A stretch of DNA of 64,000 nucleotides, from contig NC_083288.1 in the NCBI RefSeq assembly GCF_963506605.1, forward strand, positions 33,294,001 to 33,358,000, in the 5' to 3' direction. The notes beneath the pieces were generated by a model that was given only the letters and a program-made list of their open reading frames with translations, was not told the origin of the DNA and did not search any database. The DNA comes from Zootoca vivipara (taxonomy: Eukaryota). This document shows, piece after piece, positions 375 through 64,000 of this stretch. Numbering within the stretch: position 1 is the first letter of the stretch; every line of letters begins with the position of its first letter. The translations under genes and the position numbers were made by a program.

Positions 375-450
375 GGTTCTTCAGGAGCACAGTAACCCCA
401 TAATAATGGTTGGCTGCACTGATCTTCCCAACAGGCTGCTTTCGACTCAC

Positions 451-619
451 CCTTCAAAGCAATGGGCAGCTGTCACCACCCACTGGGATGAGATCAGGCT
501 TCCACCGCACACATGTAGCCTGTTCCTTCGGATGCTGACGGTCCACGGCCATTCCCCTTCATCAGCTTCCTGCCACCCAATTAAACGAGCGGTGTGCTTC
601 ACTTCAGGCTGGCCGCAGT
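451..619 (-). CDS. PRSS27-like (marapsin/testisin/tryptase cluster) S1 serine protease: exon with propeptide, activation site and catalytic His; gene continues beyond the left edge
   Basis: Encodes [52 protein letters not shown] (WPW, CGGSLI and TAAHC motifs); acceptor ccctgcag (ag at 621-620), donor GG|gtgagt at 450. Confidence 0.88.
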
Positions 620-718
620 CTGCAGGGATGAACCAGGAGCAGTCAGAGGGGGAGGGAGCAAAGCTAATATTGGTGAACACCAGCCCCATGTAGCTATGGA
701 CTCACATATCCTCCTCAC

Positions 719-7150: not shown

Positions 7151-12383
<5,233 letters not shown>

Positions 12384-33330: not shown

Positions 33331-33893
33331 AGAATCATAGAATCATAGGAGTTGGAAGAGACCACAAGGGCCATCCAGTCCAACCCCCTGCCAAGCAGGA
33401 AACACCATCAAAGCATTCCTGACATATGGCTGTCAAGCCTCTGCTTAAAGACCTCCAAAGAAGGAGACTCCACCACACTCCTTGGTAGCAAATTCCACTG
33501 CCGAACAGCTCTTACTGTCAGGAAGTTCTTCCTAATGTTTAGGTGGAATCTTCTTTCTCGTAGCTTGAATCCATTGCTCTGTGTCCGCTTCTCTGGAGCA
33601 GCAGAAAACAACCTTTCTCCCTCCTCCATATGACATCCTTTTATATATTTGAACATGGCTATCATATCACCCCTTAACCTTCTCTTCTCCAGGCTAAACA
33701 TACCCAGCTCCCTAAGCCGTTCCTCATAAGGCATCGTTTCCAGGCCTTTGACCATTTTGGTTGCCCTCTTCTGGACACGTTCCAGCTTGTCAGTATCCTT
33801 CTTGAACTGTGGTGCCCAGAACTGGACACAGTACTCCAGGTGAGGTCTGACCAGAGCAGAATACAGTGGTACTATTACTTCCCTAGATCTAGA
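33331..33893 (-). mobile_element. Young CR1 LINE 3' fragment
   Basis: Open ORF2 end [54 protein letters not shown]; ATTCTATG-type tail. Confidence 0.92.
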
Positions 33894-35099
33894 TTCTGCA
33901 ATTCACTAAGAGCTTCTCAAAAGCCATTGGGCAGAAGTTTAACATTACCACAATCATTACACAAATAGAAGGGCTTATCCTAAATAAGAACATCTCGACT
34001 CACAGAGGGTCAGGTGGGGGGAGAGAAATAGAGATGGGACCCAGTGTGGACGTCTAAGAAGCATGTTCCATAGCATGGATTCCATTACAGAAAAAACTCT
34101 GCCTACACCTCAGCATAGCTTATTTGCACTACTTCGAAAAGTGCATTTGCAAAGCAGCGCACATGTGCACGCCCAGCACAAATTAGCACGCAGGCACTTT
34201 GTGAATGAGGAAGAGTATTGTGAGCTAGCACAAGTTCTCACTTCAGGGCCCTTATGAGATAACCTGGGGCAGCTTTCAGCGAGCCCTAGAGGATTTGGAT
34301 TACGGTTCCCATCAGCTCCAGCCTGCGTTGTTGTCGAAAGCCTACATAGGACACCAGACTAGCAAAGGCTAACTTAAGGTAAGAAAGGGAGCGCTTTAAG
34401 CAATCTCATTTGCTCTCCCCATCTAGTAATGAGCTATTCAGTGAGACAGAAGTGTGGTGAGGAATGTTAGCAAGCAACAACATCCAGAAACCCTTGTGGG
34501 GAAACCCTGAGTTGACTGTATTGCCTCCCAAAACCATAAAACAGACAATCACTCATACACACCATCCAACTTCTAGGCCAAGCCCAAAGGTCCTGTCTAT
34601 TTTAGTTTTGATGAGTGGGTTAGGAGCACAGCAGCAGATTTGCCCCTCTTTTGGCAACTTCCACACCCCTCAAGTTAGCTTTGCTTTAGGCATTTGAAGA
34701 GGGCCAGACACACACTTGCGAGAGGGTCAGAGCATGTGCACAGGAAAACCTGCATTTGAACACTGCATGGGTGAAAGAGCCCAGCCAACTGTTCCATGCC
34801 AAGGTCAGCCTTCGCTAAGCACTCATTCATATAAAGCACCCAATAGCACAGTCGTAGCTCCATGTCCCCAAACACAGCCCTGAAAGGGCCCCAGAGGTGC
34901 CTCCCCTTTCCAGCACCACCACCCCCAAAAAAGAAAGGGCTCAAGAGAAATTTGTTTCGGTTCCGTAGGATGTTTCTATAGTCAGGCCTTTGTTCCACAT
35001 GTACACACCCTGAGCTTTACCAGAGGATGCAGGTGTCTGCGGGCCCCCCGGGACCCTTCTGCCCCCTTCGCTTTGCTGGAGGCAGACCTAGCCAGGAGC

Positions 35100-37707: not shown

Positions 37708-37797
37708 CATAGCTGCCAAGTTATCCCTTTTTTTCAGGGATTTTCCATTATGCTGAATAGGCTTCCTCGCGAGAAAAGGGAAAACTTGGCAGCTATG
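37708..37797. mobile_element. 90-bp hAT-type MITE
   Basis: 15-bp perfect TIR CATAGCTGCCAAGTT / AACTTGGCAGCTATG; 8-bp TSD TTTTGCAG on both sides. Confidence 0.9.
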
Positions 37798-40360
37798 TTT
37801 TGCAGAACATGAGCCCCTCTCAGAGTGCTATACATGGCTGGGCCCTGTGTTCAATAAGGTGCATTACAACCAAACTTCCTGACTTTGTAGCCTACCTGAA
37901 GCTGCAAATCCTGTATGGGAAAGGAGGTTCCAAGAATTCTGCTCAGTGTCAGTGGCCCTTTTTCCCAACCTTCACCTCTTTGCTCTACTAAGATCTACCA
38001 GGGTGAAAAGCAAGGTCTCGTTGTACCCCAATTCTGCAGAATTCTCTCAATTAAGAGACCTGCCAAAACTTCACATTATAATTTTTTTTTAAAGGACAGT
38101 ACTTAAAACATTTTTATTTTAAAAAAATTATGCTTTGATTAGAAATACAATGGTTGTTTTAATGGGCTTGGGATTGCAGCTTTGTCCCTTGGGGATTGGG
38201 AAGGAGACAAAATACTTTTTAAAAATACACTTTCCTTTTCCTTATGGTAGCCTATATGGGCAGAGATCTAAGGAGTTACTTTGCCTCATGGAATGCATCT
38301 GTACTGACCTAGTTTTACATTTTAACACTTGCCGCTCACGCGCGAGCACACACACAAGATCCACCGGCATTACATTTGTCTCGCCCATTAAACTGGCACA
38401 CAGCCTGCTAATCACTTGCATGTTTCTAGCAAGGAGGCAATTATTAGATGTATTCAAATTATTCAACCATGCAACTAGCTGGCACCAACTAGTTTCATGA
38501 GCTATTGGATCCTAGCCTTGAAAACCTTTAAATGTTTATAATTCTGATAATCAGTGGTGTGTGCGGTACAAAAAACCAGAACTATAGCTAACCCACATGT
38601 AAAATTGAAATTAAATGATCATAATATTTGGGGGGACCGGCTTTAAGAACAACAATAATTTGATATATAGTTATAGAAAGCCTCTACCCAGACCATTTTC
38701 TCAGTCTTCAAGGCCAATTGCTCATCTCTCTTAAATTTCATCAGAAATAGCAGAGACCTACTCCAGACTTGACAACATTTCTTTCTTTAACTCTCTCAGG
38801 AAAACATAAGATTTTTGGTTAAGGGGTTAAATACTAAAAAAAAAAAAAGCAATGCCAAAAAATTTCCCCTCAGCTAGTTTTATTAAAATGCTCTACTTAG
38901 TTCCCTATTCAGTTTGTCACCACTAGTGAAAAATGGTTGCGCTTTTCTCATAAAGCCACAGGAACAGGCAGTAAGTAACCTCTAATACAATGACCCCCAG
39001 TAAACTACCCTCTAAATTTAAACATGTGAGACAGAAGTTATAGCAAAGCAGAACATAGGATCTGAAGCAGCGAGGGAAACTATCTGGCAATCTTTTAGTT
39101 GAGTTATGGAGTTTCAAGTAGGGTACCTGGGTTTTGCCCTCCGCTCATACGCTGGGTGAACCAGAACACATATATTTTTATTATCAATTCTCAGAGCCAG
39201 CGAAGTCAGAGGTGGCTGGGAGTCAGATCCTCTGTTCCAAACTTTCCCAGACTTATTTGCCATTATGATTATGAATAGGTGAGTTACTCTCAATGTGCCC
39301 AGCACTTTAAAGAGCAGCAACTAAAATGCCAGTCCCTGCCCCAAGGAGGTTACAATCTAATATCTGACAAAGGGAAGGGCTGAGAGTGAACAAATGAAAA
39401 ATATGTATCTGGCTTATTTGTACACACTTAGCTCTAAGATATGGGGATAAAGGGACCGTGCCAAATGCGTCACAAACAATGCGGGTTTTGAGGAGTGATT
39501 TGATAGAAGGGGTGGGGATGGGGACTTCTCATAGTTGTGCTGGGAAGAGAATTCCAAGCACAAGAGACAGCAAAGGGGAAGGGTAGAAATTGGATTATGG
39601 TAGCAAGAGTCCTCTGGGTGGTGGGATAAAAGAGGATGAACACAGAGGCATTTGCTCTGCCAATGCTTTGTGTTCCCCTTTTACTTTGGGCTCAGAACAT
39701 CCCTGTAGGAGAAAGAGGGCAGGCTGAGGGCATCAGCAGCATGCCATCAATTGCCACATGAACTGGGTTCTCATTTGCCCTTTCTTCAAAGGCAGCCAGC
39801 TCCAATGACCAACTGAAAATCCGAACCATGTGCACTCGTTTTTGTTTCTTTCAGGTTTTTATCTGTGCATATGCCTTAAATGAAATTTTACCTTTCTGCA
39901 GAAAAAGAAAGGCAGGCCCCTTTTCCAAAGACAATGAAAGGAACCAGGCATGGAAGGAGAAGAAGGATAAAGGCAAGTAAGTATTTTGCAGGTGTAAAGG
40001 AGCTTTTAAATATTTACTACACTATTTTGCTGAACATGCAAGATTTGAGTCTCCTTCAGTTTTGTTCTCCGCTTCCTAATGCAGAATAAAGCCTTATGTA
40101 GTCTGTGAGCCCTATGGGAAAGGAAGAACGTTTTTTAATTCTGTAAAAACTGCTGTCTCACCCAAAACCCACAAGGCAGGGTAAGTCAAACCTCCCCTCC
40201 TGCTAGTATCTCTCTGTTATTTCACAACCAGGGAGCTGCCAGCGGGCGGGCGCAGGGGAGATTAAACGGGGTGGGCAGGGGTGGCGACCAGCTCACAAAC
40301 AGCCAGCGACAGATGAAGAAGACGCCAAGACCAACCCATGACCAGCAGCTGCACTTTATG

Positions 40361-40449
40361 GACAGTGGACTCATCCATAAAGTAGAAAGCACTACTAAAC
40401 GCTCGTGTCCAAGTGTAGTGTTTCCTACTTTATGGATGAGTGTACTGTG
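40361..40449 (+). ncRNA. MIR142: microRNA miR-142 family precursor (probable paralogue of mammalian MIR142)
   Basis: 5p arm CATAAAGTAGAAAGCACTACT (40376-40396) and 3p arm TGTAGTGTTTCCTACTTTATGGA (40414-40436) match canonical miR-142-5p/3p exactly; paired lower stem ACAGTGGACTCATCC / GGATGAGTGTACTGT; CNNC (CAAC) at 40452-40455. Confidence 0.97.
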
Positions 40450-42422
40450 AGCAACGGAGGCAACAAGGAGGAGCAGAGACTGGCACAGAACCAGGGAAAG
40501 GGTGGAGGGGAGGGGAAGGCGGAAATGCCACGTGGCCATCCACAGGAGGGCATCATGGTTGAACACACACACACACAGTCTTAGCCAGACTGTCACTCAA
40601 TTACAGACACATCTCTTTCCCCAAAATATAGTACATGACACTCCCAACAATAATGCTTGTAACATGTGACTCATAACTAAATCTAAGTAGGAGGTAGGGG
40701 TGGAGGACAAGACCTGGGGGGAAGGGCCCATTTATTGGCACCAACTAAGGGTGCTAAGAAGTTATTCTGCCAATACCCCCTTACCAACTTTGCTAAAATC
40801 TGTGCATGATACCGGTACCTTCTACCCTGCCACATACCCCTACCTGAATATGCTTTTAGAAAGTGGAAGGGTTTGGGAATTTGCTGGGGGCAGAGTAGGG
40901 GGTGAGTAAAATATCAGAATTCCACGATGCTTGGTACATGTGCATGGAAGCTGCCCATACATGTGCAAACACCCCATGACCAACATACCTTTAAAGACCT
41001 TCGTTGTTTGGGTAACTGTCTGAAGGTCACTAGCTGTGAATATGTGCTTGAAAGGAGAGGGGACAGGTATTACAGGATGTACTGTATGACCACTTGCATC
41101 ACGAAAATAAACTTTCAACACAGTTGCATCTTTGTACTTATTTCACAAGGGTGGGGGAAGCTGTGCTTGGGAGAGAAGAAACAGGAGCAGAATTTCACAA
41201 GTGTATCTCATTTTTAAATTTTCACTTAAGAATCAGCACTACAAACTTTGCCAACCAATGCCATAATTTTTTTGGCTTGGCTCCAGAGCAAGTCACTCCA
41301 ATTCTGATGAAATCAGTGTGGAAAGTTACTCATGAGCTAGTGACATCCTATTGGTTTCATTGTGAACGAAGTTCAATCAACTTACTCTGGATTCAAACCG
41401 TTACATGCAACCAATCCACTAATCCATGTACAGCTGAAAGCATCCTACTACTAAAGCAAATTCACAGCATCACCGCATGATACAGGCGAACGGGCACAAA
41501 AAATGAATCAGGCAACACAGAACCAAACTCTGGGGGTATTCTGCTCATCACTGCAAATCTCATGCAGTGAGATTCTTACTTTCCGTTTAAAACCTGTAGT
41601 CTAAGGCAGGAGTTTCCAAACTGGTCAACAAGCTTCATTCCACATTGTGACACTGGATTTGTGGTTTAGGATGGGGGACAGCACATTCATCACATTAAAT
41701 ATTAACACTGGTTCTTAATTGTATTTTATTGTTTCTCGTACAGTACTTATATTACAACCTGAATTTTATGGAATTCAGATTGTAATACAATATATAAGAA
41801 ATTAAAGCAACTGTAAAAATACCTTTAAAAATAAGCATTTGGCACAGTGCATTACAGCTGCTATGGCAGGCAGAAAAATAATTAAGTAGTCTGCCACGAT
41901 CCTAAGCAACTATCAAATGGTCCATGGGGATAAACACTTGGGAACCACTGGTCAAAGGCAAATTAATGGAAAAACAGGGTAAAATCAAGGTGGCAGTTGC
42001 AAGTAAGGCATGGACAGGGAATCTGCAGCCCTTCGGATGTTTCTGGACTAAACTCCCATCAGCCCACATTGCTAAGGTTGACAGGAGTTGGGAGTCCAAT
42101 GAAAACATCTAGTGGGTCACAGGTTTCCGAATTCTGTAACAAAAGGATCAGAAAACAGGAAGGGGGAGTATATTACCAGAAGGGCTGAGAGGAATATTCT
42201 ATTCCACCATTTTGAATCTCAGTCTTAAGATATTGCACTCAGCACTCCCACACTGACTTTGGAGCTACTTATGCCCTGAAACCCAGGCCAGGAATTTCCT
42301 GCCATCGGCTCCTGAAGGGACCCTCAATTGGCCAGAGCTGGGTTGGGACAGCCACCCGCCACCCATTCTTCTGGGGTTTATGAAGACCTGTCTGTCCCAT
42401 GAGAAGGCAGAAGTGAAGACTA

Positions 42423-42626
42423 GTGTTTTCTTAAGCCAAATGATGGCTTACACTTACAAGTGTTTTCTTCAGCCAAATTATGGTCCCTTCCAAAGCTTGA
42501 CAGAAGTTTCCTGGCCTAATAATAATAATAATAATAATAAATTATTATAAATTATTATTAGGCCAGGAAACTTCTGCTGTCAAGCTTTGGAAGGGACCAT
42601 CATTTGGCTTAAGAAAACACTTGTAA
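42423..42626. repeat. Long inverted repeat with AT-rich (AAT)n/(ATT)n centre
   Basis: Arm 42454-~42526 is the reverse complement of ~42551-42626 with few differences; partial third copy at 42423-42446. Confidence 0.9.
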
Positions 42627-42759
42627 TTTCAGAGTTTCAAACCATGACAGGTGCCTTGATTTGTTACCATGGCACTTATTATACACACACTTATTTGGTT
42701 TATAATATAGAATTCCGTAAGTTAAGACCTCTCTGAACCCAGAAATAACTCCTTCACAG

Positions 42760-43994
42760 TGGCAAATATCCCCTTTTTAGAGACAGTGGCAGCAGCCCAG
42801 CCTTGGGTCCATTCCAGTCTGGCTTTGGACCTGATCACTGCCTTGGTTGCCCTAGTTGATTGCATCTGTCACAAGAGAGATATGGAGAGCAGTGTGATTT
42901 TGCTCATTCTCCTCAATCACCCAGCTGCTTTTGCTGCTGCTGACCACAGTATCCTTCTAGAGATGGGGGACACCATGCTTCAGGGGTTCCACTCCTAGTT
43001 CCAGGGCCATTTCCAGAAAGTACTTATAAGAGGCGACTGTTCAACACCCTGCAAGTTGTATTGTGGTATCCCACAGGGTTCCATATGGTTCCCTCCCCCA
43101 TGCTACTTCACATCTGTATGAAGGCTTTGGGAGCTGTCGTCAGGTAATTTGGAGTGAAGTGCCATAAATATGCAGATGATACCAGCACTCGCTCTCTCCG
43201 TGTGTGTGGTTCATCTGAATCAGGAGCAGTGGTTGAGGTACTGGACTGGTGCTTGGAGGCGGGGATGGGCTAGATGTGGACTAGTAAACTAAAGCTGAAT
43301 CCTGGAAAGACCAAGATGATGTTATGTGTCTCGAGTTCTCATGCCCGGGAGGTAGAGATGGCCTGGCCTAGACAGGGTTACCCTCCCTTGGAAGGAGCAG
43401 GTCCACAGATTGGCAATGTTCCTGAATTCAACCCTATCACTGGAGACTCAATTGAGTTGGGGGGGGGGCTAGGAGTGCCTTTTTCCAGCTACAGCTGGTT
43501 CACCAGTTATGACCCCTTTCGACTAAAACTTGGGACATTGCACTCCATGCTCTGCTAACTGGCTGCCCTTGGATACTACCCAAAAACTCCAAGTGGCACC
43601 AAATGCAGCAGCCAGATTACTGGCTGGGGTTCTATTTAGATCTCACATAACCCCATTTCAAAACAGCTACACCGGTTGCCAGTTCATTTCCAGGCCCAAT
43701 TCAAGGTGTTCACAGTAGTGTTTAAAGCGCTAAATAACTGGCCCCCAATACCTGAATGGCTTCCTCCTTCCCTACACGCGCTGTCAGAAGTGAAGATCAG
43801 CAAAGTGGAGTCATACTATTTGTTCTACCGCCATCAGAAGCTCAGGGTGGTGATGGCCCTGGAGAGCATTCTCTGTGCAGCCTCTGAATTGTGGAACTCC
43901 CTTCCCACAGAGATGAGTCTGATTACTTCATTATATAGCTTTTAGTGAATGCTGAAAGGTCACCTCCTTACCCTGGCACTACGAACACACACAC

Positions 43995-47334: not shown

Positions 47335-50300
47335 TTAGGGGGACCTGGAAGGGGGCAAAGAGAGGAGAAATTAACAAGCTTAGCTCCCAGGATGGGCTAC
47401 CACCCGAATTTCCCAGCCTAGGGGCAGGCCACTTGCCCCAAGCACTTGCAGTCACTCCAGAGTATACTGCAACTTTTTCTCCATTTTCTACATCACCTTA
47501 AGGAAACATGGCCATTTGGACACCAGTAGTACAGAGTGAAAAATGTTGTGAGGGAGAAGGGAAAGCTTCACAATGCCCACTGGAGAGGCTCCAGACAGCC
47601 TAATGTATCTGCAAGCCATTAGGGAATGAGGCAGGAAAGAGTCCACAACCCCCAAATAGAAAAACCCACAGAAGGCCTGCTTCTGAAGACAGGCATCTAT
47701 ACAATGAGCCAGCCCAAGCCCACCTTCAGCACACTTCTTGCCCCCCTCCCCCAGGAAAGCACTTGGGACCATGACATCACACACCAGGAAGCAAAAGAGG
47801 CTGCAGTAACAACCTCCACCTATTTGTAATACTTTCTACCTGTGTGATGGTTTTAACAGTCAGCTGCTCTGGGGGTCAATCTTGGTTTGAATGTGAGGTG
47901 AAGCAAATATTCCCCATACAGTGATGTCAGAAAGGTCTACTCAATGTTCTTTCAATTTGTTTACTAACATTACTAGAAGGAAACCTCCCATCCAGGAAGT
48001 TACAGAGTCTGACCTACTCAACTTCCACTGAATTACAGTGCAGCTGCACCATGTGCTTTTCCAGCCATCCTATGACACGATTCTGTAACTCAACTGCAAA
48101 GATCAGCAGGAACATGGAGCAGAGCGTTTTCTGGGACACTACACCCAAGGCCATTCACTTAAGAGCAGAGGGGAGGAGCTGCAGCCCCAGTGACAAAGGT
48201 GGCCCTCTAGAGCATCTTTATCTGGCCCTTGGACCTCCTCCTAGGCCACACCCAGAGCCAGGCTCTGTGCTTTTACCTGACTGGAATGTGTGTCCTTAAA
48301 CTATTACAGTTCATCTTGCTTGCCTGAATGGAGGATAGAGAAACAGGGAAAAGGGGCTCTATGTAGAAACCTGTTCTTACAGGCTGCTTTTTGTCAATAA
48401 TTCAAATCTGGAGTTGCTGGGGTTTATGCTGAATTACTGCTCTTTATGAGCTGTCATATTTTATAAGCCACCTTGAATACTGTCAGAAACCAAGCACATA
48501 CTACCTTGAAGTTCTGCGGCGGGGGACTCGAGGGCTGGGGGAATTGCGTCGACGTTTCCGGCCTGGAGACCTGCTGATGCTTCGTCTGTTTCTCTGCGAG
48601 GACCTGTCCCTGGACCTGTCCCTGGACAAGCAAAAGAAGGCATGAAGCTGTTCCAAGTTATCTTAACTCCAATTTTCACATATCCTTCCCTATTCCAAAC
48701 AGATCCCTAGCCACCGCCTCCCTGCCTCACAATCCCAACATGGTGAGAAGGGAGGCTCAGGTACCTACCTGCGTCGGTCCCTTGGAGCTGAAGGCAGCTG
48801 GACCGGAGGGGATACCCGGCGGCGTTCTGCAGGGGAGTAGCTGAGGGAACGTGAATCACGCAGCGAGTCAATAGGCTTCCGGGGACTGCGTGACCTGAAG
48901 GAAGAGAGAGAAGATGGGCTGCTTAGAGTGCATTCACCACACTTGGTCCTTCAGCTATAGGAGAAGAAAAAGAACTTGTGTGATCATTTTCCAGCAAAAT
49001 GCTGGACAAGAGTAAAGCATGGACACACCCCTAGGCTATACCCAGAGCTAAATACCCATGCACTCGTACTACATGCAGAGTTCAGAATCCTTTCATTTTT
49101 AAGACATTTCCAATTCAGTACTAGTTCCATATTTTGGGAGCCCACACATAAGATTCTCTGTGTCCTCATTCTTTTCACTGACATCACTTGCAGGTCAGGG
49201 AGAGAAGCAAGCAAGCAAGCAAGCAAGCAATGCAGCAGCAGCAGGTGCCACACCATTTTCCTTGCTGTTGCCATAACTCATGCAGTCAATCTGGGCCAAA
49301 GGGTGGGTAAGCAAATGGTTACGGGTAAGTAGGGTCAGCAGACTCTCTGCAAAGGGTCCCCTGCTTGCCCCCCATCAGGCCAAGCCCCAATGCTGGAGTT
49401 GTTTGAATCCTTAAAGCTGCAAAGGCAGGCTACAGTATGTGCAGGAAATGCCTGGCAAGATCTCAGTCGGGTGGAGACTAAGCAAGCTTTCTAGTGCAAA
49501 GGACTTCGGAGCCCAGCAGAAATCCGGGCCGCTAACAGTGGCTTTCAAGAAGAGGTTGGTGCAAAGCAAGCAAACAGATTCCAGATTCCTTAACAGAAAC
49601 ATGAAAGCTGCCTTATACAGAGCCAGATCACTGTTCCATGTAGCTCAGTCCTGTCTACACCAGGGATGAGGAACCTGTGATGCTCCAGATGTTGTTGGAC
49701 CACAACTCCCATCAGCCTCGGGGAACATGGCCAATTATCAGGGATGTCCAACATCTGGAGAGCCACAGGTTCCCTATTCCTAGGCATCAATGATTGGCAG
49801 CAGCTCTCCAGTACTTCAAACAGGGGCCTACTACCTGGAGATGCCAGTGGCACAAGAGTAAGCCTCCCTACTACCACCCACCCACACAATCAGGCCCAAA
49901 GTTTTCTGCACCTTTGTTGCCCACCTGCAACACTTGGGGGTTTTGGCATTCTGCTACACATGCTCTTTTTACATCATTTTCACTAGCAATGTGGTGCCAA
50001 CAGCTACCCTAATTAAAGAGTTGGAAGAACAGAGAACAGTCCCACAGGATACAACAGTCATGTAGGAGGAAGGGGCTGGCCCACCCCTATACTAAAATTA
50101 AGCCCCTGCCAATAGGTCATGGAATCATTCCATTGCAGCAGATTATCAGCTCTTTCACCAATAACCAATAATAATACTTACTTCCTCTTCTCTGGAGACG
50201 GCTTCTTTTTGGGGACCACTTTGGCTGGTACCTGGGATCCAGTCTTAGGCGACGAGGGTGAAGCAGAGGAGGAGGATGATGAAGATGAGGAGGAGGCAGA

Positions 50301-53300
50301 GGAGGAGGAGGAGGATGTGGAGGAGGAGGAAGAGGAAGAGGAGGAAGAGCTGCTGCTGGAACTGCTGGAGCTCTGAGAACGGCGCTTACGTTTGCCCACT
50401 TCCAAAGGCTGCTCATCACGGTTAGCCTCCTTCAGCACTGGACTTGGTGGCCTGGGAAGGGAGAAGAGAAAATGAAGGATAGTATCAAGTTCAAACACAC
50501 AGGGCAATTGTATTAAAAGGAATAAGAGAGGTATTGGTGGGTTATTTCTAGAATCACCATTTTTGTTTCTTTGCCAAGGGAAACTGATACACCAACCTTT
50601 GGATCATGGTGTTTATTGGAAAGGTCCTGGAGGCTAGCTGCCTTAGCCCTTTACATTTCTGTTATCAGAATGGTTGCTGCTGTTCCCACCACACCAGAAA
50701 ACATTAAAGGCTTCTACGTACATTGGCCTACTGCTACATCACAATGGTTATATCACTCAAGGGGCCAGTGTTCTTAGATCAATGCAAAATCATCACCTTC
50801 AGTAGGAACAGCAACCTCACTAGTAAGACAATGTCAAAGGAGGTCATCATTCCTGCTGAAGTTCAAAACTCAGAACAGTATTTTGATTAGTGATTCTAAT
50901 GATCAGCCTCCTCCATCTCAACTCTTGCTTCCTCTTCCCATTCTCCAGTTCCCTAATGCCTTGTTTTCTAGTTCTATCACCCCAAACCATGGCAAAAGGA
51001 AGTATGAAAAGTACAGTGAACTAGAATCTTGGGGAAAGAATCAAAGGATGTTCACAAACCTAGCCACATGTATTTCATGTGTACAAAAACATGCTCTGCA
51101 AGGGAGCCCTGCATTTGGTTTCACCAGGTGTGCTTTAAAGGAGCAAAAGACTTGCATGGGGCCTGCAGTGCAGATTTAGAGCCCAAATTCCATGTGCCTT
51201 CCTGCTACAAAGACGCAGTGAAGTGAAACAAGGTTAGCCTCTGGTGGACAAAGGCCACCATTACAGTTTTTAAAACCATTTCAGCTAACATGAAGAACTT
51301 TATGAGATCTTTAAAAACTAAGAGGTAAAGTTCTCACCCTCATTTGGTAGATTTAAGTGTCAGAATACAGTGGGGAGAGAAGCCATGAAAAGCAAAAGGA
51401 TTTCTATGCCAAGCTTAAGAAACATACAAGATATGGACACTGGCCACCCACAAGCAGAATCTGGGATAGCTTAGCTATACAGGTCATGTTATGCCCTTTT
51501 TGCTTAAGGAAGCCTCTCATCTGGACACCTATTGGCATCTAGATTTGAGAGAGGACCAGCTGAAAAGGGGATGGCAAACATACATCCTTGTACCTTTCTC
51601 AAGCCTAGTTTCTGTGCTAAGGAATGGAGATGCCTTTATGCCCCTCCAATGGCCAGCATACAAACACAGGTTACCAGCTTCTTAATAACTTCTGACAGCT
51701 TATTTTCAAGGCTGATATTCGTACCAAGACACACGACAGTGGTTAATTTAGCTCACCAAAGCGAGGAGGATTCAATTATTAGCTGGCGCTTATCTTGTTA
51801 TATTGGGGCAGCCAACCCCTGACCTGAAGAGCTGATGCAACCACCCAAGGAAGTTTTTCTGGCCTCCAAAACCCCACCAATGCTGGAGATGTAAATCTTC
51901 CTCTCCTCAGCCATCAGGCTGGAGTGGAGAGAGGAAAATTACCAGCTGAGGTGGTGTGGGTGGGGGGAAATACCTACTACTGACAATCCGTGCCCAAACA
52001 GTTGACCAAGAGTGAAGGCACGCCTCAGGCCACAAAAGGTTAGCAACCAGTTGAGCTTTGCATAAAAATCTTACAGAGAATAATATCTCTTGGTTTTCAT
52101 GGTCTTAGCTATTTTGCACTCTCAGCCTGCATAGAAGAACACACACTTCAAGTATCAGATGAAATGGATCTTGTCCCAAAAAAATTCATGCTATAATGTG
52201 AGTCTTTCAAGGTGCTACAAAACTCCCTTTTCCGGAGTGGAAGGCACAATGTGGAGTTGTACAGTGGCGGAGATGGTTGGAAAACAAGGCACAAAGGGTT
52301 AGAGGTTAGGATAACTTGAGTAAATACAGCAGAACAGGTGATCTAGAAGTGAAGACAAGATGCAAGATACCAGTAGCTTCATATAAGACAGGCATGAGCA
52401 GTGATTACTAGCAACTTAAGAGAGCGAGAAGGTGTGTGGGGGAGAGAAATATAGACTCTTACTGTTTTGGTACAATCTCCGCCTCAAGGTCTTTTGCCGG
52501 CTGATCCGGGGGGATGGACTCAGATGAGCTGGATTCAGAATCCGAATCAGAAGACGATGAGGAAGAGGAGGAGGAGGAGGAAGAGGAAGTGGTGGAAGAA
52601 GCAGATGAACTTCTCTTCACCTTTGAAGCAGCAGAGGGTGGTGGAGAGGGGACAGCCAGTTGTGGGGCAGTAGAACAGCTGCTCCTGGTGTTCTCCTCCA
52701 TGGCAACAGAAGCCAGCTGTGGCTCAGCCTCCAGGGTGGGGAGGCGCCCTGCAGGCCTCTCTGCTACTTTTCCTTCAGATACAAACTCCTCTTCTTTGGG
52801 GGCTGGGGCTAGCACAGAAACCAGGGCTGGCAAGGGGCTGGAGGACTCAGAGGAGGACGACGATGACCGAGCTTTAACAGGAGAAGGGGAGTCTGCATGG
52901 GAACTGCTTCTCCCTGACAAAGGAGCACCAGCAGCTGTTTCATCCCTAATTGTGGAAGGATGAAAGACCTGACTCCTATCTCCAGGGCTGTCTCGGACAG
53001 TCGTGGAACCGCCATTCTTTGACACGGCAGATGGAGCAGGAGACAAGGCCTTTCGAGCTATGGGAGAGTCCTCACATGGTGGAGTTGGAGTGCGAGGGAT
53101 GGCAGTGTTGCTTTTGCTGTGCCATAGCGAGGGTGCTGATGACTTCTCCTGGGTGTCAGACTTAGGGTATTTCTCCAGCACAGGAGGAGAGCGGGATTTC
53201 CTTCCTGGAGAGGTGCAGATTTCTCGGGAGCCTGATCTGGAATGCTTCCTCACAGGAGACGACCGAAAATCAGGAGACACTCTGGACCCAGTGCTTTTGT

Positions 53301-56300
53301 AGCTTGCTGTTATTCGTGGGGCATCTAATCTGGGAGGTGAACGGGATGCATTCCGGCTGGTAGCACTCCGTTGTGGTGACAGCCTAGACATCTCTCTCCG
53401 TGCTGGTGATCGGGAATGGCCTCTGCGAGGTGAGGCGACTGAGCGCTCACCCTTCCATGTGAAGCGAGATTTGTCTTGACGGGAAGGGGATCTTGAGCAG
53501 CTTCGGCCTGGGGATGAGATGGACCTTTCCCGCCGTAATGAGCCCCGAGACTTGTCTCGCCGCCTGGAGAGCGAACGGGAGCGACTCCTCCATGACAGAG
53601 AGCCAGATCTTCCCCGTCGCAAGGAGGTTCGAGGTCGGTTGTCACAGTGAGATGACGATTCAGATCTACGTGGATGCATGCTGGTGTTCGACCTCTGCCT
53701 TGAGCGCGATCTAGACCTCTGTCTCAGAGGTGTTCTAGATTTCCGTCTCGGGCTCAATGGTGACATAGATCTCCGTCTTCTTGTAATTGGTGTTCTAGAC
53801 TTCTCTCTGGCTCGTGGAGATGAACCAGACCTTCGACGTCGTGGTGGGGTTCTAGATTTTATTCTGGGTCTTGGGGAGGATCCAGATCTGCGACGGCGGC
53901 GAGGTGGGGTTCTGGACTTCATTCGTGGTCTTGGGGATGAACCAGACCTGCGTCGCCTTGGTGGGGTTCTGGACTTCATTCGTGGTCTTGGAGATGATCC
54001 AGACCTACGTCGTCTGGGGGGTGTCCTGGACTTCACTCTGGGCCTTGGTGGTGACCCAGACCTACCACGCTTTGGTGGAGTTCTGGATTTTGCTCTAGGT
54101 CTGGGTGGAGACCTTGATGTCCTGCGTCTTACAGGTGTCCTTGATTTTACTGACGGTCTGGGAGGTGACGGAGATCTGCTTACAGATTTTTCTTTTCGTT
54201 CTGGTGAAGACTCTGAACTGCTCTCACTGTTGTGTATTCTTGGCTTCTCTTTAACCTCTGAATACGACCCTGACCTGCTCCTCCAAGGTGCATCTCTGAG
54301 TGCCTCTTTCTTCTCTACAGGATAAACCTTCAAAGTCTCACTTGCTTCTGGAGAAGCTCCAGGTCTGTTGTGCTTTGCAACAGCTGGAAGTGTGCTGTTG
54401 TCTGGTTCTGGAGATGAATCTGACCTGCTGTGTGCTGGCGATGATACAGATTTGCTCTTGTTGACTGAAAGTGTTGCAGAGCGACTCAGTCGTGGAGGTG
54501 ATCGAGATTTATTGTCTTCTGGAGAAGATGTTGATGAAGAGGAGGAGGAAGAGGAGGAAGAGGAGGAGGAGGAAGAAGAGGAGGAGGAAGAAGAGGAAGA
54601 TCCAGATCTACTTCGCCTTGATGGAATCTTTGACTCTGTGAGTACTGATGACCCAGGCTGGCCTTGACTTGGTGGAGACTTCAATTTCTCTTTCCCAGGG
54701 GGAGATGAATCTAATTTACTTTTCTGGAATGGTGATGCAGCTCCCTCCATTACTGCCAATGATTTGTTGTGCCTTGCAGGTGACCCAGATTTTGACTTTA
54801 TTTCTTGGGACTTATTTTGTTTTGGGGGAGATCTGGATTTGCCATTTAGTTCAGGAGATGATCTGGACCCACTTCTCCTCATAGGTGATCTAGACTTCTC
54901 TCTCACTGCTGGAGGGGAGAGCCCAGGTCTGACCTGAATCAACGGTGATGTGACTTTCTTTGTCTCAGGAGAGTACTTCAACTTGCTCCTGGAAGGAGAT
55001 TTAGATTGCTCCTTGACCAATGGGGAGGAACCAGATCTGCTTCGCCTTGCTGGTGATCTGGATTTCTTCAACTCCAAAGAGCCGGTTGTACATTTTCCCA
55101 GTGGTGAAGTGGATTCCTTCTTCAGTTCCAAAGATGATCCAAATGTAGTTCGTCTTGGAGGAGAAAGAGATTTCTCCCTCAAAGCTGGAGGTGATCCAGA
55201 CAAGCTCTGCCTTCGGACTGGTGATCTAGGCTTCTCTTTTGCTGCTAAAGACCTTCCAGATCGGCTTCGCTGCAACGGGGGTGTAGACTTTGGTTCTGGA
55301 GAGGTTGTTCGTCTTGGAGGGGATATTGAGTTTTCTTTTGTTGATGACTGAGAGGAACCAGACCGGTCTCGTCTTGGAGATGATCTTAATTCCTTCTGCA
55401 GCCCTGGAGAGGACCCTGACTTGGTTTTCACCTCTGGAGAAGACTCAGACCTGTTTCGCCTTCTGGAGGATCCAGACCTGCTACGTCTTACAGGTGAGTT
55501 AGATTGGCTTCTTCTGGAAGACATTTTAGTTTTCTCTTCAACTGCTGAAGAATCCTCAAACTTCTTTGTATGTCTTGGAGATGAACCAGATCTGCTCCTT
55601 GAGGACATGCTAGATTTATTTTTGACTGCTGGAGGTGTCCTGGATTGACTTCGCCTTTCTGGTGATCTGGATTTCTTTTTTGGTGTTGAAGAACCAGACC
55701 TGCTTTGCCGTGGAGATAACCTGGACTTCGTTTTCAGCCTGGGTGAAGAACTAGAGCGACTGTGCCGTGATGGTGTTCTTGATTTTTTCTTCCTTGACCT
55801 TGGAGATGAACCTGAACGACTTCTTCTAGGAGACAACTGTGATTTCTTCTTTGCCTTTGGAAGTGATCCAGATCGACTGCGCCGGGGAGAAACACGTAAT
55901 CTGCTCCTTGATTCAGGAGATGAGCCAGACTGGCTACGCCGCAAAGGTTTTCTGGACCTCTCTCTCATTTGGGGGGAGGAACCAGATCGGCTTCTTCTTG
56001 AAGAAATTCTGGAGGCCTTCCGATCCGGAGATGACACAGACCTACTTCGCCTTGCTGAAATTAACGACTTCTCTCTCCTTGGTGAAGAGCTTGACCTCCC
56101 TCTCCTGGGAGGGGTTCTGGTTCTAGATCGCCCTCTTCTGGGTGGAGTTCTGGATCGAGACCTTGCTCGTCTGGGTGGAGTTCTGGATCGAGATCGGCCC
56201 CTTCTTGGTGGGGTTCTTGAACGTGACCTCCCTCTTCTTGGTGGGGTTCTTGACCTGCCCCATCTCCCACTATTTCTGCTTCTAGACCAGCCATGCCTTT

Positions 56301-59300
56301 GGGGAGTTCTAGAACGAGACCAGCCACGCCTCTGAGGTGTCCGTGATCGGCCCCATCTAGGAGGACTTCGTGAGCGTGACCTGCCCCACCGCTGGGGTGT
56401 TCTTGACCGGCCCCGCCACTGAGGGCTGCGAGAACGGATCCTTCTCGGAGGAGTACGTGAACGGGATCGAGCACGTCTCTGAGCCGAGCGAGACCTTCCC
56501 CTCCTTGGAGGTGTGCGTGATCTGCCTCTCTTAGCTGGGGTGCGTGACCGAGATCTACCTCTTCGAGCAATGGGTGTTTGGGAGAGAGATCTATCCCTCC
56601 GACTGGTCCTTGACTTGTTGCCCCTGGCTGGAGGGGTGCCCGATAATTCACGACGAGATGTGACCTTGGCAGCCTGCTTTTGCCCAGAGCGGGAGACTTC
56701 AGGGGATGAGCTAGACCTCTCTCTCTGTGCGGAGGTCTTCTCTTTGCCTTGCCTTTTAGGAGGCTCCTCTGGAGAAGAGCTACGGGAAACTGGGGCTGGC
56801 TTGGTTGCTGGGGAAGGAGAGGAGGAGGAAGAAGAAGAGGAGCAGCTACCACTCTCTGAAGGAGAACAAGAGCGCTGAGGTGGAGAGCCATCGGGTGAGC
56901 CCTTCCTCAACTTTATCTCACTGGCTTTAGAAGTAGGAGATGAGGCAGCTGCCAGATTCTCCTTCTTGTCAGTCGATGATTTAGCCTTGGATAGTAGAGT
57001 CCCATTATGATCCTCTGTCTGCTTCTTAGGGGGTGGGGAGACACTCTCCTTCGAGGAGGGATGCTTCTGCCCCGAGACTCTTTCCCGAGAAGGATCACTT
57101 GGCATTGGAGAGCGATGCTTGAACCTTGAATCCCGCTCAAATGATGGAGAGGATTTCCGATCCCCATGCCGAGCAGACTTCCTCTCCTTCTCTCTTTCCT
57201 TCTCTCTGGCAGGAGATAAAGAAGGGCTGCCAGAGCGCTGGCGGGTCTCACGTACTGGAGAATGCTTGGACATAGTTTTCTGGACAACAGGAAATTTAAA
57301 AAAAAAAACTGTTAGTATTACAACCCCGACTCCATGATTTTTCTCCTACAAATATAATCAAGTCCTGCTGAAATCCCTAAGGAATCTCTGTTGCAAGTCA
57401 CTAAAGTATAATCCCGTACCTCCCGCTTTTCTCTGCTTTCTCGAGGGCTTGGGCTCCTGCCCCGCCGGACAGGCTCAGGAGAAGATGAGCGTGTTCTCTC
57501 TGGCAGATTCTTGGAAATTGCCTCAGTTTCCCCTTGTTTACGTGAAGGTGCTGAGGGAGACTTGCTCTGTCGCCTTAAGGGGGCCCGCTTCTGGGCTATG
57601 GTGCTACCTGACCTGTAGATGATAAATAACTATCAGAGACTTGAAATGTGAGTTAGTCTGAAATCTGGTTTCAAGAACACTGGATTGGGTGAGGAAGGAA
57701 TAGAGGGAACTTTGGATCTCCATCCCAAAGCCGTACCTGCTACAGGAAGCATCTGAAGAGGAAGAATCATCTGGGGATGAGGAACGATCCCGTCGGCCTT
57801 TCTGAGATGCGGACTCACTAGTGGACCTAAGAGAGTTAGAAATGTGAGCAGAAAGGATGCAAAAAAAAGACCACCTTTAGCAAGGAGGGATCTTGGTAGT
57901 GGCAAGAAAAACATGATTTTTACCTCCTGCGTTTCTTTTCCTTAGACTTGTGTTTGCTCTTGGGACTTGGGGACCTGGAAAAAGACATTTGTTTTCAAAC
58001 ATTCTGGAAACATTGCACAGCCATTATTTCTATCTCAATTCCTATAGTACCCACTGCAGAACATCCCTGTCCCTAGGAATAACCAAGAAGCTATTATTAA
58101 ACAGATGTCCCTAAAACACCGCCACACAATTCATAACAAAGAGATCAATGCAACATGTGGCTAGTAATGTTGGATGTAGTTGTGGGACAATCAGATTCAA
58201 GTCACCACTCAACAATGAAAATCACAGGGTATCCTCTGAGAACTCACAATTTCTCAGTTCTGATTGGTTGAGAATACAAGCAGAGTAAAATCAGAATTGC
58301 ACTCTCTATACCCAAATGCATTTTTAAAATGTTAAGACTCACCTGTGCTTTCTTTTCTTTGACTCTGACCTACAAAAAAGAAACAGGGTCTTACATACTT
58401 CAGCTTATTGCCGGTCACCTAACAACATAATAGTATGCCCAGAAACCTTGATACTGGATGAAAAGTGATGACTTCCCTCCACCCCAGTCCTACACACGAT
58501 GCTTTCAGACAGAGAATTTCTGACAAGAGATAGCTGCATATAGGGTGAGAAAGGCCCCAAACTCTACATCACGCAACTTCTTTTGTAGGGAAAAACAAGA
58601 CAACCGTATCCCACAGAAAGCAAGAGGTCTGTTCTCTCATGCACACTTGAAGACAAACCAGAAGCTACTTAGGAAACACTGAAAATAACCATCAGATGAA
58701 GAGATAAAGATTCTAAAGCCCAGTCTATCACACTAAACCAGCCTGTCTCTCCCAAGACAGCCCCTTACCTGTGTTTCTTTTTCTTTGAACTTTTCTTCCT
58801 CTCCCTCCGAGAAGGTGATCTGCTCTCAGATCTTGAAGAGACAAATGAAAGGGACATATTACATGTGGTAAGGAGTAAGGGAGACCCACACATCCCAGAT
58901 CCCTTACTCTCTCCCCTCACTAATGCACCCCACCTAGTCAAACTCAAACTGACTCCCTCTTCTCGCCACATCTCACCACTGCCTTTGCTCATTCACCCAC
59001 CTGCCTCTGTCTTTCTTCTTTTTCTTCTTCTTCTGTTTTGGGGACGGTGAGCGGGAGCTGCTAGACTCTTTAACAAGACTGGGAAAACACAGAGAAATGG
59101 TGAAAAACCAACTCCCAAACAGGCTCCAAAATAACGGCTCTCCCTTCCTTCTTTCCTCTCCCCATTCCTCCCAACACATCCCCAAGCAGGCAACTAGGCT
59201 GCCAAATTCTCAAGTTTAGGGGCATTAGCATGCACACCACAAAAGGAATATTAGGGAGTCCCAGTATCGTTAACAACCCTTACAAAAAATATGTCAAAAC

Positions 59301-61813
59301 TACAGCAAACTCATGTCAAAATACAAATCAGATTTTTTAATGCATATATATTTAATAAAGGTATCATCTGATGTAATCTTACCCCAAGGCAAGGCTTGTA
59401 TTATATAGTACAGTAAACGTCAAACAACTTTTATCAAGTAATATCTATTTCTTAAACAAAAAAATACAGTAACTTGATTCCCAATCCATGTAAAGCGACA
59501 GGAGCTCAACTGAGGTAAGCACAACCATGTCTACCTCCCCAACTTCTATCTTTTCTTTCCTCAGCAAGGATGCCCACATACCTGTACTGCTTTTGCTGTT
59601 CCTGCTGTTGCTTAGCTGCTGCTGCAGCTGCAGCTGCCGCTGCCTCCTTAGCCCTGCGGTTGGGGTCAAAGGAGCTGCCATCCACATAGTTGTCACTAAT
59701 TCCAAAGGCAGCTCTGAGCCTCTCGTTCTTCTTTTCATTGGCCTCAGCCAGCTGATGGGTCTCTGTGACACTGGAGAAGAACAGAAATAGTTACTACAGG
59801 GGAAACCTGAGGTTATGAGGCAAGCCCGAGGGAAGTATGGGAAGAGCAACAAGCCCCACAGGGAAGGGAAAGGAGGTGGGGCGCTAATAAATCAGAACCA
59901 AAATCCACCAAGGTGCCTTACTTACGTCGGCTTCTGCTGCTGTTCCCCCTCCTTGACCACTGCTACATCCTTCTCCAAAAGCATCATCCGAAAAGTGGCT
60001 ACCTTTTCCTGGATCTCCCCTTCTCCATACCTGGGTTGAGAACACCAGAAAATATTTTACAAGGCTTACCAGATGGGCCCCATAAACAAGGCAACCAGTC
60101 TCTAATGAGGTAGTAGGCAGTGCTGCTAAGGGACATGAATCATAACAGATTGAAAACACAGACTACTTCTATCTAGCACAGCATAGTACTTATGACTTAA
60201 ATGTAAACCAAAGACTTAAGCACACACACACACACAATCATGACCTAGCTAAGTGTCTTTCTACGAACCACTATTCTCTCAGCCTCAACCTCCCTGAGAT
60301 CTGCAATTTAGAGATAATATTACAATAACTGTGCATAGGAGAATCATCATTATCAATAAAGCATTTGACTAGAACTTCAAAGTATTTTATAAAAAGCTAA
60401 GCAACATTGTTACTACCCCCCAAAAGGAATAATTTTCTACTACAAATGAAAATGTCATCTTCACTCCTGGAATCCAGCAAAACAAAATTGACAAATTTAA
60501 CTTTTCTTGCAATACACATAAAATTGATTCAACACCTACTAAATGTAAAGTAACTTCACTCTGCTTGTTTTTCCTATAAATAAGTTAATACTACATATAT
60601 TGTACCTGAAGCACTTCTGAACAAGTCCCACTGAAACCAACAGGCAGCAAGCGGCCAGTGCCACAACGCATATGTACATCTAGCATGTATAGTTTATGAC
60701 ATGATTTCTCATATTTTCAACTCGAGGCAGCCAAAAATTAATGATGTCCTCCCATCACAAAATGGTAATATATATAGGCGGTTTGGTACTATCAGCAGGC
60801 AATTACTGACATCTAATCAATATTTAGAAATTACTAAATTCTTTGCCAAAGCATTTTCCTTGTGAGAATGAGGTCCATAGTTTAACTTTCCTCAAGCATA
60901 GTAGACATTTACTCAGGAGGTACTAAGACTCAGCCCCCCTATTGACTACTCCAGAGAATTGACAGATCCTGAGGCTCACTTTAAGTAGAGAAAGAAGGCT
61001 TTTCCCCCACTCCCAAGCACCTCTCATAAGTATTTTTACCCATTTCATGTAAATTCTTCTCCCATTCACCTTTCATGCTCAACTTGTGCCTCATTCCCCC
61101 ACCCTACCCTACCCTCGAGCCTGGTCCTTGAACATGTTCACTTATTCTTCCCATTTCAGTTTTCCTCTTTACTCCTAGTTTATTTATACCTGTATTATTA
61201 ATCATAAATATGTAACTTTCAAATTTCCTTCAACACCTACTCTCACCCTTTGCCCTTAGAGGAAGCACAGCTTTTCCTTCCTCACCCCTGCTTCCTAACT
61301 TTGTCTACCTTCCATCATTGCTGTGGTAAGAAATCAGAGTAATTGGTCAGTTACCAAGACCAATGTTGCCAACAAATGAAGGCAGAAATCCCAGGTGCAA
61401 TGCCACATACCCCACCTTCCCAAATCCCACATACCCCACCTTCCCATACCCCACCTTCTTCCACAATTGCTATCAGCCTTATTCATTCAACAGCTGTCAC
61501 TGTCTCCATGCTTATTTTCAGCCCACATTGTTATATCCCAATTGTTATATTCCCTATTGCCTGCTACAACCTACCCCTGCTCTTCCATGAGTTCAGCCAA
61601 CTCTAAGCATTTCAGCTCAACCTTCCGCTTGCGCTCGTGGTCCAGGATGTCCTGGTTGGGTTTTTTAACCAGGGATGACTCCAGCTTCCTCAACTCCTCT
61701 TCTGACTTGTAGTCAGTGCGATCTTTCTTGTGGCGCACGGCCGAGAGGTTGCGCTGCACGTAACCGTTGGTGCCGCTGCCCCGGGGAGTGGGGAGTCCTA
61801 TCCCATTGTACAT
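47335..61813 (-). CDS. SRRM2: Serine/arginine repetitive matrix protein 2 (SRm300), complete, 14 coding exons, ~2124 aa
   Basis: N-terminus MYNGIGLPTPRGSGTNGYVQRNLS plus cwf21 domain. Exons 61575-61813, 59926-60030, 59582-59770, 59001-59078, 58769-58831, 58343-58369, 57924-57974, 57737-57826, 57420-57612, 52463-57279, 50182-50451, 48769-48894, 48505-48621 and 47335-47344 are all GT-AG, sum to 6375 nt and stay in frame. C-terminus SPRKPIDSLRDSRSLSYSP..RSP*. Confidence 0.96.
52463..57279 (-). CDS. SRRM2: SRRM2 giant exon (4817 nt) encoding the RS-rich disordered region
   Basis: 1604-aa open frame with RSRSRTP and SGSSP repeats; gtccag|AAAACT acceptor, CA|gtaaga donor. Confidence 0.96.
61402..61458. 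repeat. Short tandem repeat, three copies of CATACCCCACCTTC
   Basis: Direct read in SRRM2 intron 2. Confidence 0.7.
61575..61813 (-). CDS. SRRM2: SRRM2 first coding exon (exon 2 starts at 61850)
   Basis: MYNGIGLPTPRGSGTNGYVQRNLSAVRHKK..ILDHERKRKVELKCLELAELMEEQG. Confidence 0.96.
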
Positions 61814-63900: not shown

Positions 63901-64000
63901 GCTGATGTTGCTGCATTTTGTTTCCCGTTTCTCCTCAGAAAGAGGAAAGAATGGGGAATTTTATTCCTAGAGGGACTTTCCATAAAGCCCAAAGTGAAAG

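What the first reader, a model, noticed from the sequence alone, without database searches (positions are those of the whole stretch)
40361..40449. Intact miR-142 hairpin between ELOB and SRRM2: a miR-142 locus non-syntenic with mammalian MIR142
Seen in sequence: both mature arms are identical to canonical miR-142-5p/3p, with a full stem and a CNNC motif. The loop (AAACGCTCGTGTCCAAG) differs from the human loop as I recall it (AACAGCACTGGAGGG) and looks closer to the teleost mir-142a loop. Established: human MIR142 lies at 17q22 near TSPOAP1/SUPT4H1, while SRRM2/ELOB lie at 16p13.3 with no miR-142; miR-142 is a major haematopoietic miRNA. Inference: this is a second, probably whole-genome-duplication-derived paralogue retained in squamates and lost in eutherians. 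It may already be listed as a Mir-142 paralogue in MirGeneDB; I cannot check that.
Basis: partly seen in the sequence, partly recalled or inferred. Interest (0 to 1): 0.85.

Follow-up and report, generated by a model that had tools for sequence, protein, structure and literature searches.

The report
miR-142 gene between ELOB and SRRM2
This is a real, intact copy of the blood-cell microRNA miR-142 lying between the ELOB and SRRM2 genes of a reptile-like genome, most likely the second, duplication-derived miR-142 gene that microRNA catalogues already record and that humans have lost, so it is sound but largely ordinary.

Summary
Window 40363-40448 (+) is a full-length mir-142 precursor: Rfam RF01896 scores 97.4 bits (gathering 57, E 1e-19). 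Both arms match the family consensus, the stem runs about 34 positions (-53 kcal/mol, z -5.75), and a CNNC lies 16 nt past the 3p end. Only the loop differs. The neighbours are confirmed too: a trypsin-like exon, ELOB (+), about 34 kb with no visible coding gene, then SRRM2 (-). The hairpin lies about 28 kb past ELOB and about 6 kb past the SRRM2 3' end.

Peterson et al. 2022 (PMC8789304) list two Mir-142 paralogues in the jawed-vertebrate ancestor. Human and elephant shark keep one; coelacanth and alligator keep both.

I could not show that this locus is that second paralogue. The same paper puts Mir-142 on linkage group G, but human 16p13.3 genes on group H.

Interest is low to moderate.

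The parts
40363..40448 (+). mir-142 precursor hairpin (pre-miRNA plus basal stem)
   Evidence: Rfam RF01896, 97.4 bits, E 1.2e-19, full model 1-85. Fold -53.2 kcal/mol, z -5.75. Inverted repeat I2, 34-nt arms.
40376..40396 (+). miR-142-5p arm
   Evidence: Identical to the Rfam family consensus over the whole arm (alignment). Coordinates read.
40397..40413 (+). terminal loop AAACGCTCGTGTCCAAG, diverged from the family consensus; contains a UGU
   Evidence: Sequence. Few matches to the consensus loop in the alignment.
40414..40436 (+). miR-142-3p arm
   Evidence: Identical to the Rfam family consensus over the whole arm. Coordinates read.
40452..40455 (+). CNNC motif (CAAC), 16 nt downstream of the 3p end
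   Evidence: Read. That this position is the one that favours Drosha processing is from my own knowledge of the published motif.
10392..12380 (+). ELOB (elongin B) coding exons: 10392-10526, 11250-11354, 12267-12380
   Evidence: Exon 2 is 100% identical to elongin-B of snakes, a lizard, turtles and alligators. Ubiquitin-family match. Exon-by-exon comparison.
48504..61813 (-). SRRM2: N-terminal cwf21 exon 61574-61813, giant Ser/Arg exon 52459-57273, 3' exons 50181-50603, 48768-48950, 48504-48662
   Evidence: N-terminal exon matches PDB chain 5mqf_S (Serine/arginine repetitive matrix protein 2), E 8e-36. Pfam cwf21 and a weak SRRM_C match. Translations.
450..701 (-). exon of a trypsin-like serine protease gene on the far side of ELOB
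   Evidence: Pfam Trypsin PF00089, E 1.3e-14. Translation.

Best explanation
The feature is a functional, independently transcribed miR-142 gene in the tail-to-tail gap between ELOB (+) and SRRM2 (-).

Proposed mechanism:
1. RNA polymerase II makes a non-coding primary transcript on the + strand.
2. Drosha/DGCR8 recognises the roughly 34-position stem and cuts about 13-14 nt above its base, at 40375/40376 and after 40436, helped by the downstream CNNC.
3. Dicer removes the 17-nt loop.
4. Both arms are loaded into Argonaute as miR-142-5p and miR-142-3p.

Both arms match the canonical family sequence, so the gene would repress the same targets as mammalian miR-142, presumably in blood and immune cells.

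In evolutionary terms it is most likely the second (beta-subgenome) Mir-142 paralogue. That paralogue arose in the early vertebrate genome duplications, is catalogued in MirGeneDB (Mir-142-P2 in release 2.1), and has been lost in human.

Shown here: the hairpin, arm identity, stem geometry, the CNNC motif, and the gene neighbours.
Inferred: transcription, processing, tissue, and equivalence with the catalogued paralogue.
For: -: full-length Rfam mir-142 match at 97.4 bits, with both arms identical to the consensus.
- one long stem, z -5.75 against shuffles.
- CNNC at +16; loop differs from the consensus while the arms do not. That is the pattern left by selection on the mature products.
- the neighbours are a trypsin-like gene, ELOB and SRRM2.
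- no coding gene was seen between 12.4 and 46 kb, only LINE fragments. The hairpin is therefore intergenic.
- 2 kb on each side of the hairpin has no other copy in the window, so it is not inside a repeat family.
- no A-rich tail downstream, so no sign of a retrocopy.
- (PMC8789304): two Mir-142 paralogues in the gnathostome ancestor; human keeps one; alligator shows reads from both.
- the human gene carries a paralogue suffix in MirGeneDB.
Against:
- No scan of the rest of this genome was possible.
- Peterson et al. place Mir-142 on linkage group G, yet place NTHL1, MPG and SLX4 on group H 1-alpha. These genes flank SRRM2/ELOB on human 16p13.3 (positions from my own knowledge). A simple reading of this locus as the group-G beta copy is therefore not confirmed.
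- Simakov et al. state that the beta copies of groups G and H are labelled '2' arbitrarily, so the published label carries little positional information.
Confidence: 0.6

Rival explanations
1. The gene is the only miR-142 gene of this genome. The lineage lost the copy syntenic with mammalian MIR142 and kept the other one, a reciprocal loss relative to mammals. The mechanism is the same as in the best explanation, but this locus would carry the whole miR-142 function.
For: - Both arms are unchanged from the consensus. Peterson et al. report that beta copies tend to accumulate changes in the mature sequence and to be expressed at lower levels.
- In SuppFile5 a Mir-142 row appears only for alligator. 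None appears for Anolis, turtle, chicken or frog. I read that as those species having one Mir-142 gene in MirGeneDB 2.1.
Against: - The rest of this genome could not be searched.
- The window's species is not identified beyond a sauropsid-like ELOB.
- The single Anolis gene may equally be the alpha copy.
- My reading of the missing table row is an inference about how the table was built.
Confidence: 0.25
2. The gene is a lineage-specific relocation or DNA-level duplication of the ordinary (alpha) miR-142 gene into the ELOB-SRRM2 gap. It would then not be an ancient genome-duplication paralogue.
For: - The flanking human genes belong to linkage group H 1-alpha in Peterson's table, while Mir-142 is on group G.
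- The gap is large (about 34 kb) and full of LINE fragments, so it has taken up foreign DNA.
Against: - The loop shares few positions with the family consensus while the arms are identical. That fits a long separate history better than a recent copy.
- No poly(A) tail or flanking direct repeats were seen.
- A second ancient paralogue is independently documented.
Confidence: 0.12
3. The hairpin is a silent relic: it is conserved in sequence but is no longer transcribed or processed.
For: - No RNA evidence could be obtained.
- No listed holder of the stretch is on record as RNA.
- No CpG island or clear promoter motif lies upstream.
Against: - An unexpressed hairpin would not keep 44 arm positions, a stem of about 34 positions and the CNNC intact while its loop diverged.
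- Mammalian miR-142 promoters are also not CpG islands (own knowledge).
- Several runs guessed to be RNA hold 7-29% of the 6-kb stretch's words. Their kind and the part they hold are unknown.
Confidence: 0.03

Closest known systems
Human MIR142 (hsa-mir-142; Hsa-Mir-142-P2 in MirGeneDB 3.0, Mir-142-P1 in 2.1), chromosome 17
   Same: Same Rfam family. Both mature arms are identical to the family consensus, with the same stem architecture and 3' flank. The expected products and targets are therefore the same.
   Different: - The loop differs.
- Three basal-stem positions differ from the consensus, and at least one turns a mismatch into a pair.
- The neighbours are entirely different: ELOB/SRRM2 here, against chromosome 17 in human.
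- Zebrafish mir-142a shares the chromosome 17 synteny.
The second gnathostome Mir-142 paralogue of MirGeneDB (Mir-142-P2 in release 2.1, subgenome 2-beta; present in coelacanth and alligator)
   Same: It is a second Mir-142 gene outside the human-type locus, absent from human.
   Different: Equivalence is not shown. I found no coordinates or sequences of that paralogue in the searchable literature. Its published linkage group (G) differs from the one given for human 16p13.3 genes (H 1-alpha). I infer that it is named Mir-142-P4 in MirGeneDB 3.0; a search for that name found no paper.
Zebrafish mir-142a / mir-142b and Xenopus mir-142-1 / -2 (miRBase)
   Same: They are examples of vertebrates annotated with two mir-142 genes. 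Zebrafish a and b are both targeted in published mutants.
   Different: Zebrafish mir-142a is the human-syntenic copy. I found no location for mir-142b. The Xenopus names are from my memory only.

Membership tests
mir-142 microRNA precursor family (Rfam RF01896 / MirGeneDB MIR-142) | Covariance-model score above the curated gathering score over the full model | tested here: met
   97.4 bits against 57, model positions 1-85 of 85, E 1.2e-19.
mir-142 microRNA precursor family (Rfam RF01896 / MirGeneDB MIR-142) | Mature 5p and 3p sequences, seeds included, match the family | tested here: met
   Every arm position equals the consensus in the alignment: 5p 40376-40396, 3p 40414-40436.
mir-142 microRNA precursor family (Rfam RF01896 / MirGeneDB MIR-142) | Imperfect hairpin with a stem of about 35 bp that places the arms opposite each other | tested here: met
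   MFE structure has 6+17+9 pairs and two 1-nt internal loops, -53.2 kcal/mol, z -5.75.
mir-142 microRNA precursor family (Rfam RF01896 / MirGeneDB MIR-142) | Reads from both arms with homogeneous 5' ends and 2-nt 3' overhangs (MirGeneDB annotation criteria) | not testable with these tools
Beta-subgenome Mir-142 paralogue (MirGeneDB 2.1 Mir-142-P2) | Lies outside the locus syntenic with human MIR142 | tested here: met
   The window shows a trypsin-like gene, ELOB and SRRM2 around the hairpin. The human gene is on chromosome 17.
Beta-subgenome Mir-142 paralogue (MirGeneDB 2.1 Mir-142-P2) | Lies on the beta copy of chordate linkage group G | tested here: inconclusive
   Mir-142 is listed on CLG G. 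NTHL1, MPG and SLX4 of human 16p13.3 are listed on CLG H 1-alpha. ELOB and SRRM2 themselves are not listed, and the beta labels of G and H are arbitrary.
Beta-subgenome Mir-142 paralogue (MirGeneDB 2.1 Mir-142-P2) | Orthologous by position or sequence to the second Mir-142 gene of alligator or coelacanth | not testable with these tools
No vertebrate genome collection is on hand, and no sequences or coordinates were found in the papers.
Beta-subgenome Mir-142 paralogue (MirGeneDB 2.1 Mir-142-P2) | Whether it coexists with, or has replaced, the alpha copy in the same genome | not testable with these tools
   Only this 64-kb window is available. Scan notes for this genome do not mention SUPT4H1 or TSPOAP1.

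The most novel reading that the evidence does not exclude
This lineage (apparently a squamate) may have lost the miR-142 gene that mammals and zebrafish keep (mir-142a), as I recall birds do too. It would then run its whole miR-142 function from the other genome-duplication copy, now sitting between ELOB and SRRM2 among genes of a different ancestral linkage group. That would be a reciprocal loss of an essential blood-cell microRNA and a case where a 'beta' copy won.
Probability: 0.25. Interest if true: 0.5.

Novelty: already known. Interest (0 to 1): 0.3.

Why it matters
miR-142 is a master microRNA of blood and immune cells. Its gene history shows how duplicated regulators are sorted after the vertebrate genome duplications.

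The existence of a second paralogue lost in human is already published, so the present locus mainly adds a well-defined address: the ELOB-SRRM2 tail-to-tail gap. If it proves to be the only copy in squamates, it would run against the published trend that beta-subgenome microRNA copies are the ones that decay. It would also matter to anyone using lizard or snake blood-cell miRNA data.

The mismatch between the linkage group published for Mir-142 (G) and that of the human 16p13.3 neighbours (H) is a small, checkable point for people who reconstruct ancestral vertebrate chromosomes.

Tried and rejected
Steps that gave no result:
- **RNA and DNA reads.** There is therefore no evidence on expression, ends or a second copy.
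- **SRRM2 giant exon search**. Nothing scored among 8000 low-complexity candidates.
- **cwf21 exon against protein representatives**. It found many relatives but gave no genomic context.
- **Paper searches.** 'Mir-142-P4' gave 0 papers. mir-142 + SRRM2 + synteny gave 0. Species-prefixed names gave nothing on location.
- **Supplements.** Those of Simakov 2020 and Nakatani 2021 hold no SRRM2, ELOB, SUPT4H1 or NTHL1 by name. The hagfish genome paper has no Mir-142.

Readings considered and rejected:
- **Host protein-coding gene.** None was seen between 12.4 and 46 kb.
- **Hairpin inside a repeat.** The flanks are unique in the window.
- **Retrocopy.** No tail or target-site repeats were seen.
- **Promoter motifs upstream.** Nothing convincing was found, and such matches would prove little.

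Left out on purpose:
- A pattern scan of metagenome contigs with the 5p arm. It would mostly return unlabelled mammalian, possibly human, host contamination.
- Joining the ELOB or SRRM2 exons into spliced models. Exons were searched one by one by reference.

Two kinds of within-window computation still covered them: the repeat scan and a regex script on the window file. One search left them out.

Full report
**What is there**

Rfam's covariance models were run over the whole window. They give one strong non-coding RNA hit: mir-142 (RF01896) at 40363-40448 on the + strand. The score is 97.4 bits against a gathering score of 57, E 1.2e-19, and the match covers the full model (positions 1-85 of 85). 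The reverse strand scores 73.2 bits, which is usual for a near-palindromic hairpin. The + strand is the better match and is the one whose arms read as the known products.

In the printed alignment every position of both arms equals the family consensus. Only three positions of the basal 5' stem and most of the loop differ.

From the sequence:
- 5p arm: 40376-40396
- loop AAACGCTCGTGTCCAAG: 40397-40413
- 3p arm: 40414-40436
- CAAC: 40452-40455, 16 nt after the 3p end. From my own knowledge of the published motif, this is where a CNNC helps Drosha processing.

Folding 40340-40470 gives a single stem of 6+17+9 pairs with two one-nucleotide internal loops. The energy is -53.2 kcal/mol against -31.8 +/- 3.7 for shuffles (z -5.75; 0 of 200 shuffles fold as well). 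The 5p arm starts 13-14 nt above the base of the stem. From my own knowledge, this geometry is what Drosha measures.

**Surroundings**

- ELOB lies on the + strand, with coding exons at 10392-10526, 11250-11354 and 12267-12380. Exon 2 is 100% identical to elongin-B of several snakes, a cordylid lizard, turtles and alligators. It gives a ubiquitin-family match.
- Exon-by-exon comparison puts squamate sequences marginally on top. ELOB is too conserved to name the taxon.
- SRRM2 lies on the - strand. Its N-terminal exon (61574-61813) matches the SRRM2 chain of human spliceosome structures at E 8e-36 and Pfam cwf21.
- The 1604-codon Ser/Arg exon is 52459-57273. Three further 3' exons run down to 48504, the last with a weak SRRM_C match.
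- Candidate poly(A) signals for SRRM2 lie at about 46.3 and 46.9 kb.
- At the left edge, 450-701 (-) is an exon of a trypsin-like protease.

The order is therefore protease gene, ELOB, a gap, then SRRM2, with ELOB and SRRM2 tail to tail. To my knowledge this is the arrangement at human 16p13.3, except that the human gap is very short.

Here the gap is about 34 kb. In it I saw no coding gene, only LINE fragments such as the reverse-transcriptase piece at 19120-19746. The hairpin sits about 28 kb beyond ELOB and about 6 kb beyond the SRRM2 3' end, on the ELOB strand. Two kilobases on each side of it have no other copy in the window. No A-rich tail or flanking direct repeats suggest a retrocopy.

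**How it most likely works**

The gene is probably an intergenic microRNA gene with its own non-coding primary transcript. Drosha/DGCR8 would crop the hairpin at the base of the arms, Dicer would remove the loop, and both arms would enter Argonaute. Both arms are canonical, so the targets should be those of miR-142 elsewhere.

Intact arms, an intact stem and a flanking motif combined with a diverged loop are what selection on the mature products leaves behind. That argues against a dead relic. Transcription, processing and tissue of expression are inferred, not shown.

**Comparison with what is known**

- The human gene is on chromosome 17 (PMC13435480). Zebrafish mir-142a on chromosome 5 shares that synteny (PMC3528674). 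The present address is therefore non-syntenic with it.
- The idea of a second paralogue is not new. In Peterson et al. 2022 (PMC8789304), SuppFile3 lists Mir-142 as one ancestral gene on chordate linkage group G, with P1 on subgenome 2-alpha and P2 on 2-beta.
- In that file both paralogues are counted in the last common gnathostome and in the coelacanth. Only the 2-alpha one is counted in human and elephant shark.
- SuppFile5 gives read counts for both in alligator, 23 and 114.
- The human gene accordingly carries a paralogue suffix in MirGeneDB: P1 in release 2.1 (PMC9404528) and P2 in release 3.0 (PMC13435480).
- I infer that release 3.0 renamed the pair P2/P4 to follow its subgenome scheme. 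A search for 'Mir-142-P4' found no paper.

**What remains open**

I could not show that this locus is the catalogued second paralogue. The same paper's SuppFile1 assigns NTHL1, MPG and SLX4 to linkage group H, subgenome 1-alpha, not to G. To my knowledge these genes lie on either side of SRRM2/ELOB on human 16p13.3.

Several points soften this mismatch:
- ELOB and SRRM2 themselves are not in that table.
- Simakov et al. 2020 say that the beta copies of groups G and H are labelled '2' arbitrarily.
- The same table gives TBX6 as group G. I recall TBX6 at 16p11.2, so human 16p may carry both groups, and an old fusion with reshuffling could reconcile the two assignments.

This is my reasoning, not a result.

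SuppFile5 has a Mir-142 row only for alligator. None appears for Anolis, turtle, chicken or frog. I read this as one Mir-142 gene in those species. If the lizard gene is the one seen here, the lineage would have kept the 'other' copy and lost the human-type one. I give that a quarter chance.

There is therefore no read evidence.
A within-window repeat scan and a regex script did cover them.
- No vertebrate genome collection is on hand.
- Exons of ELOB and SRRM2 were searched singly by reference.
- The scan's earlier notes hold nothing on miR-142, SUPT4H1 or TSPOAP1 in this genome.

**Verdict**

This is a genuine, intact and very probably functional miR-142 gene at a well-defined non-mammalian address. 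It is most likely the already catalogued second paralogue (0.6). The main live alternative is that it is the sole copy of this lineage (0.25). A lineage-specific relocation (0.12) and a silent relic (0.03) are less likely. In kind it is already known. Interest is 0.3.

Noticed in passing
window 15316-15373 (-): Partial tRNA-like match (Rfam tRNA, 31 bits, model positions 8-63 only) inside a non-coding stretch. It is probably the head of a tRNA-derived SINE rather than a tRNA gene.
   Followed up: no
window 42419-42626: Nested inverted repeats about 2 kb downstream of the hairpin: 53-nt arms at 94%, 28-nt arms at 96%, and 26-nt arms at 100% around an (AAT)n-like core. This looks like a small palindromic transposon or foldback element. 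One arm is the only repeat hit of the hairpin's flanks.
   Followed up: partly
window 1456-1994 (+), 2407-2769 (+), 33411-33902 (-), 19120-19746 (-): LINE fragments. 19120-19746 matches Pfam RVT_1. The two pieces near 1.5-2.8 kb share a C-terminal motif (…GTRRRGRQRTRWLD…AWRA.VHGV…) that I recall from Bov-B/RTE-type LINEs, which would fit a squamate genome. None of these pieces matched Pfam at E 0.01.
   Followed up: partly
window 12400-46900: The ELOB-SRRM2 tail-to-tail gap is about 34 kb here, with no coding gene seen. As far as I recall, the two genes nearly abut in human. The gap may hold the microRNA's own promoter and host transcript.
   Followed up: partly
window 6000-8000 and 62000-64000: These are the only CpG-rich stretches of the window (CpG observed/expected 0.5 and 0.7). 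They fit the promoters of ELOB and SRRM2. There is none near the hairpin (0.2-0.3 at 38-42 kb).
   Followed up: no
runs X13, X16-X20: Several runs guessed to be RNA, from organism A and from a second species label (organism C), hold 7-29% of the sampled words of 37400-43399. This might reflect a transcript from the stretch. Their kind is a guess, and which part they hold could not be seen.
   Followed up: no
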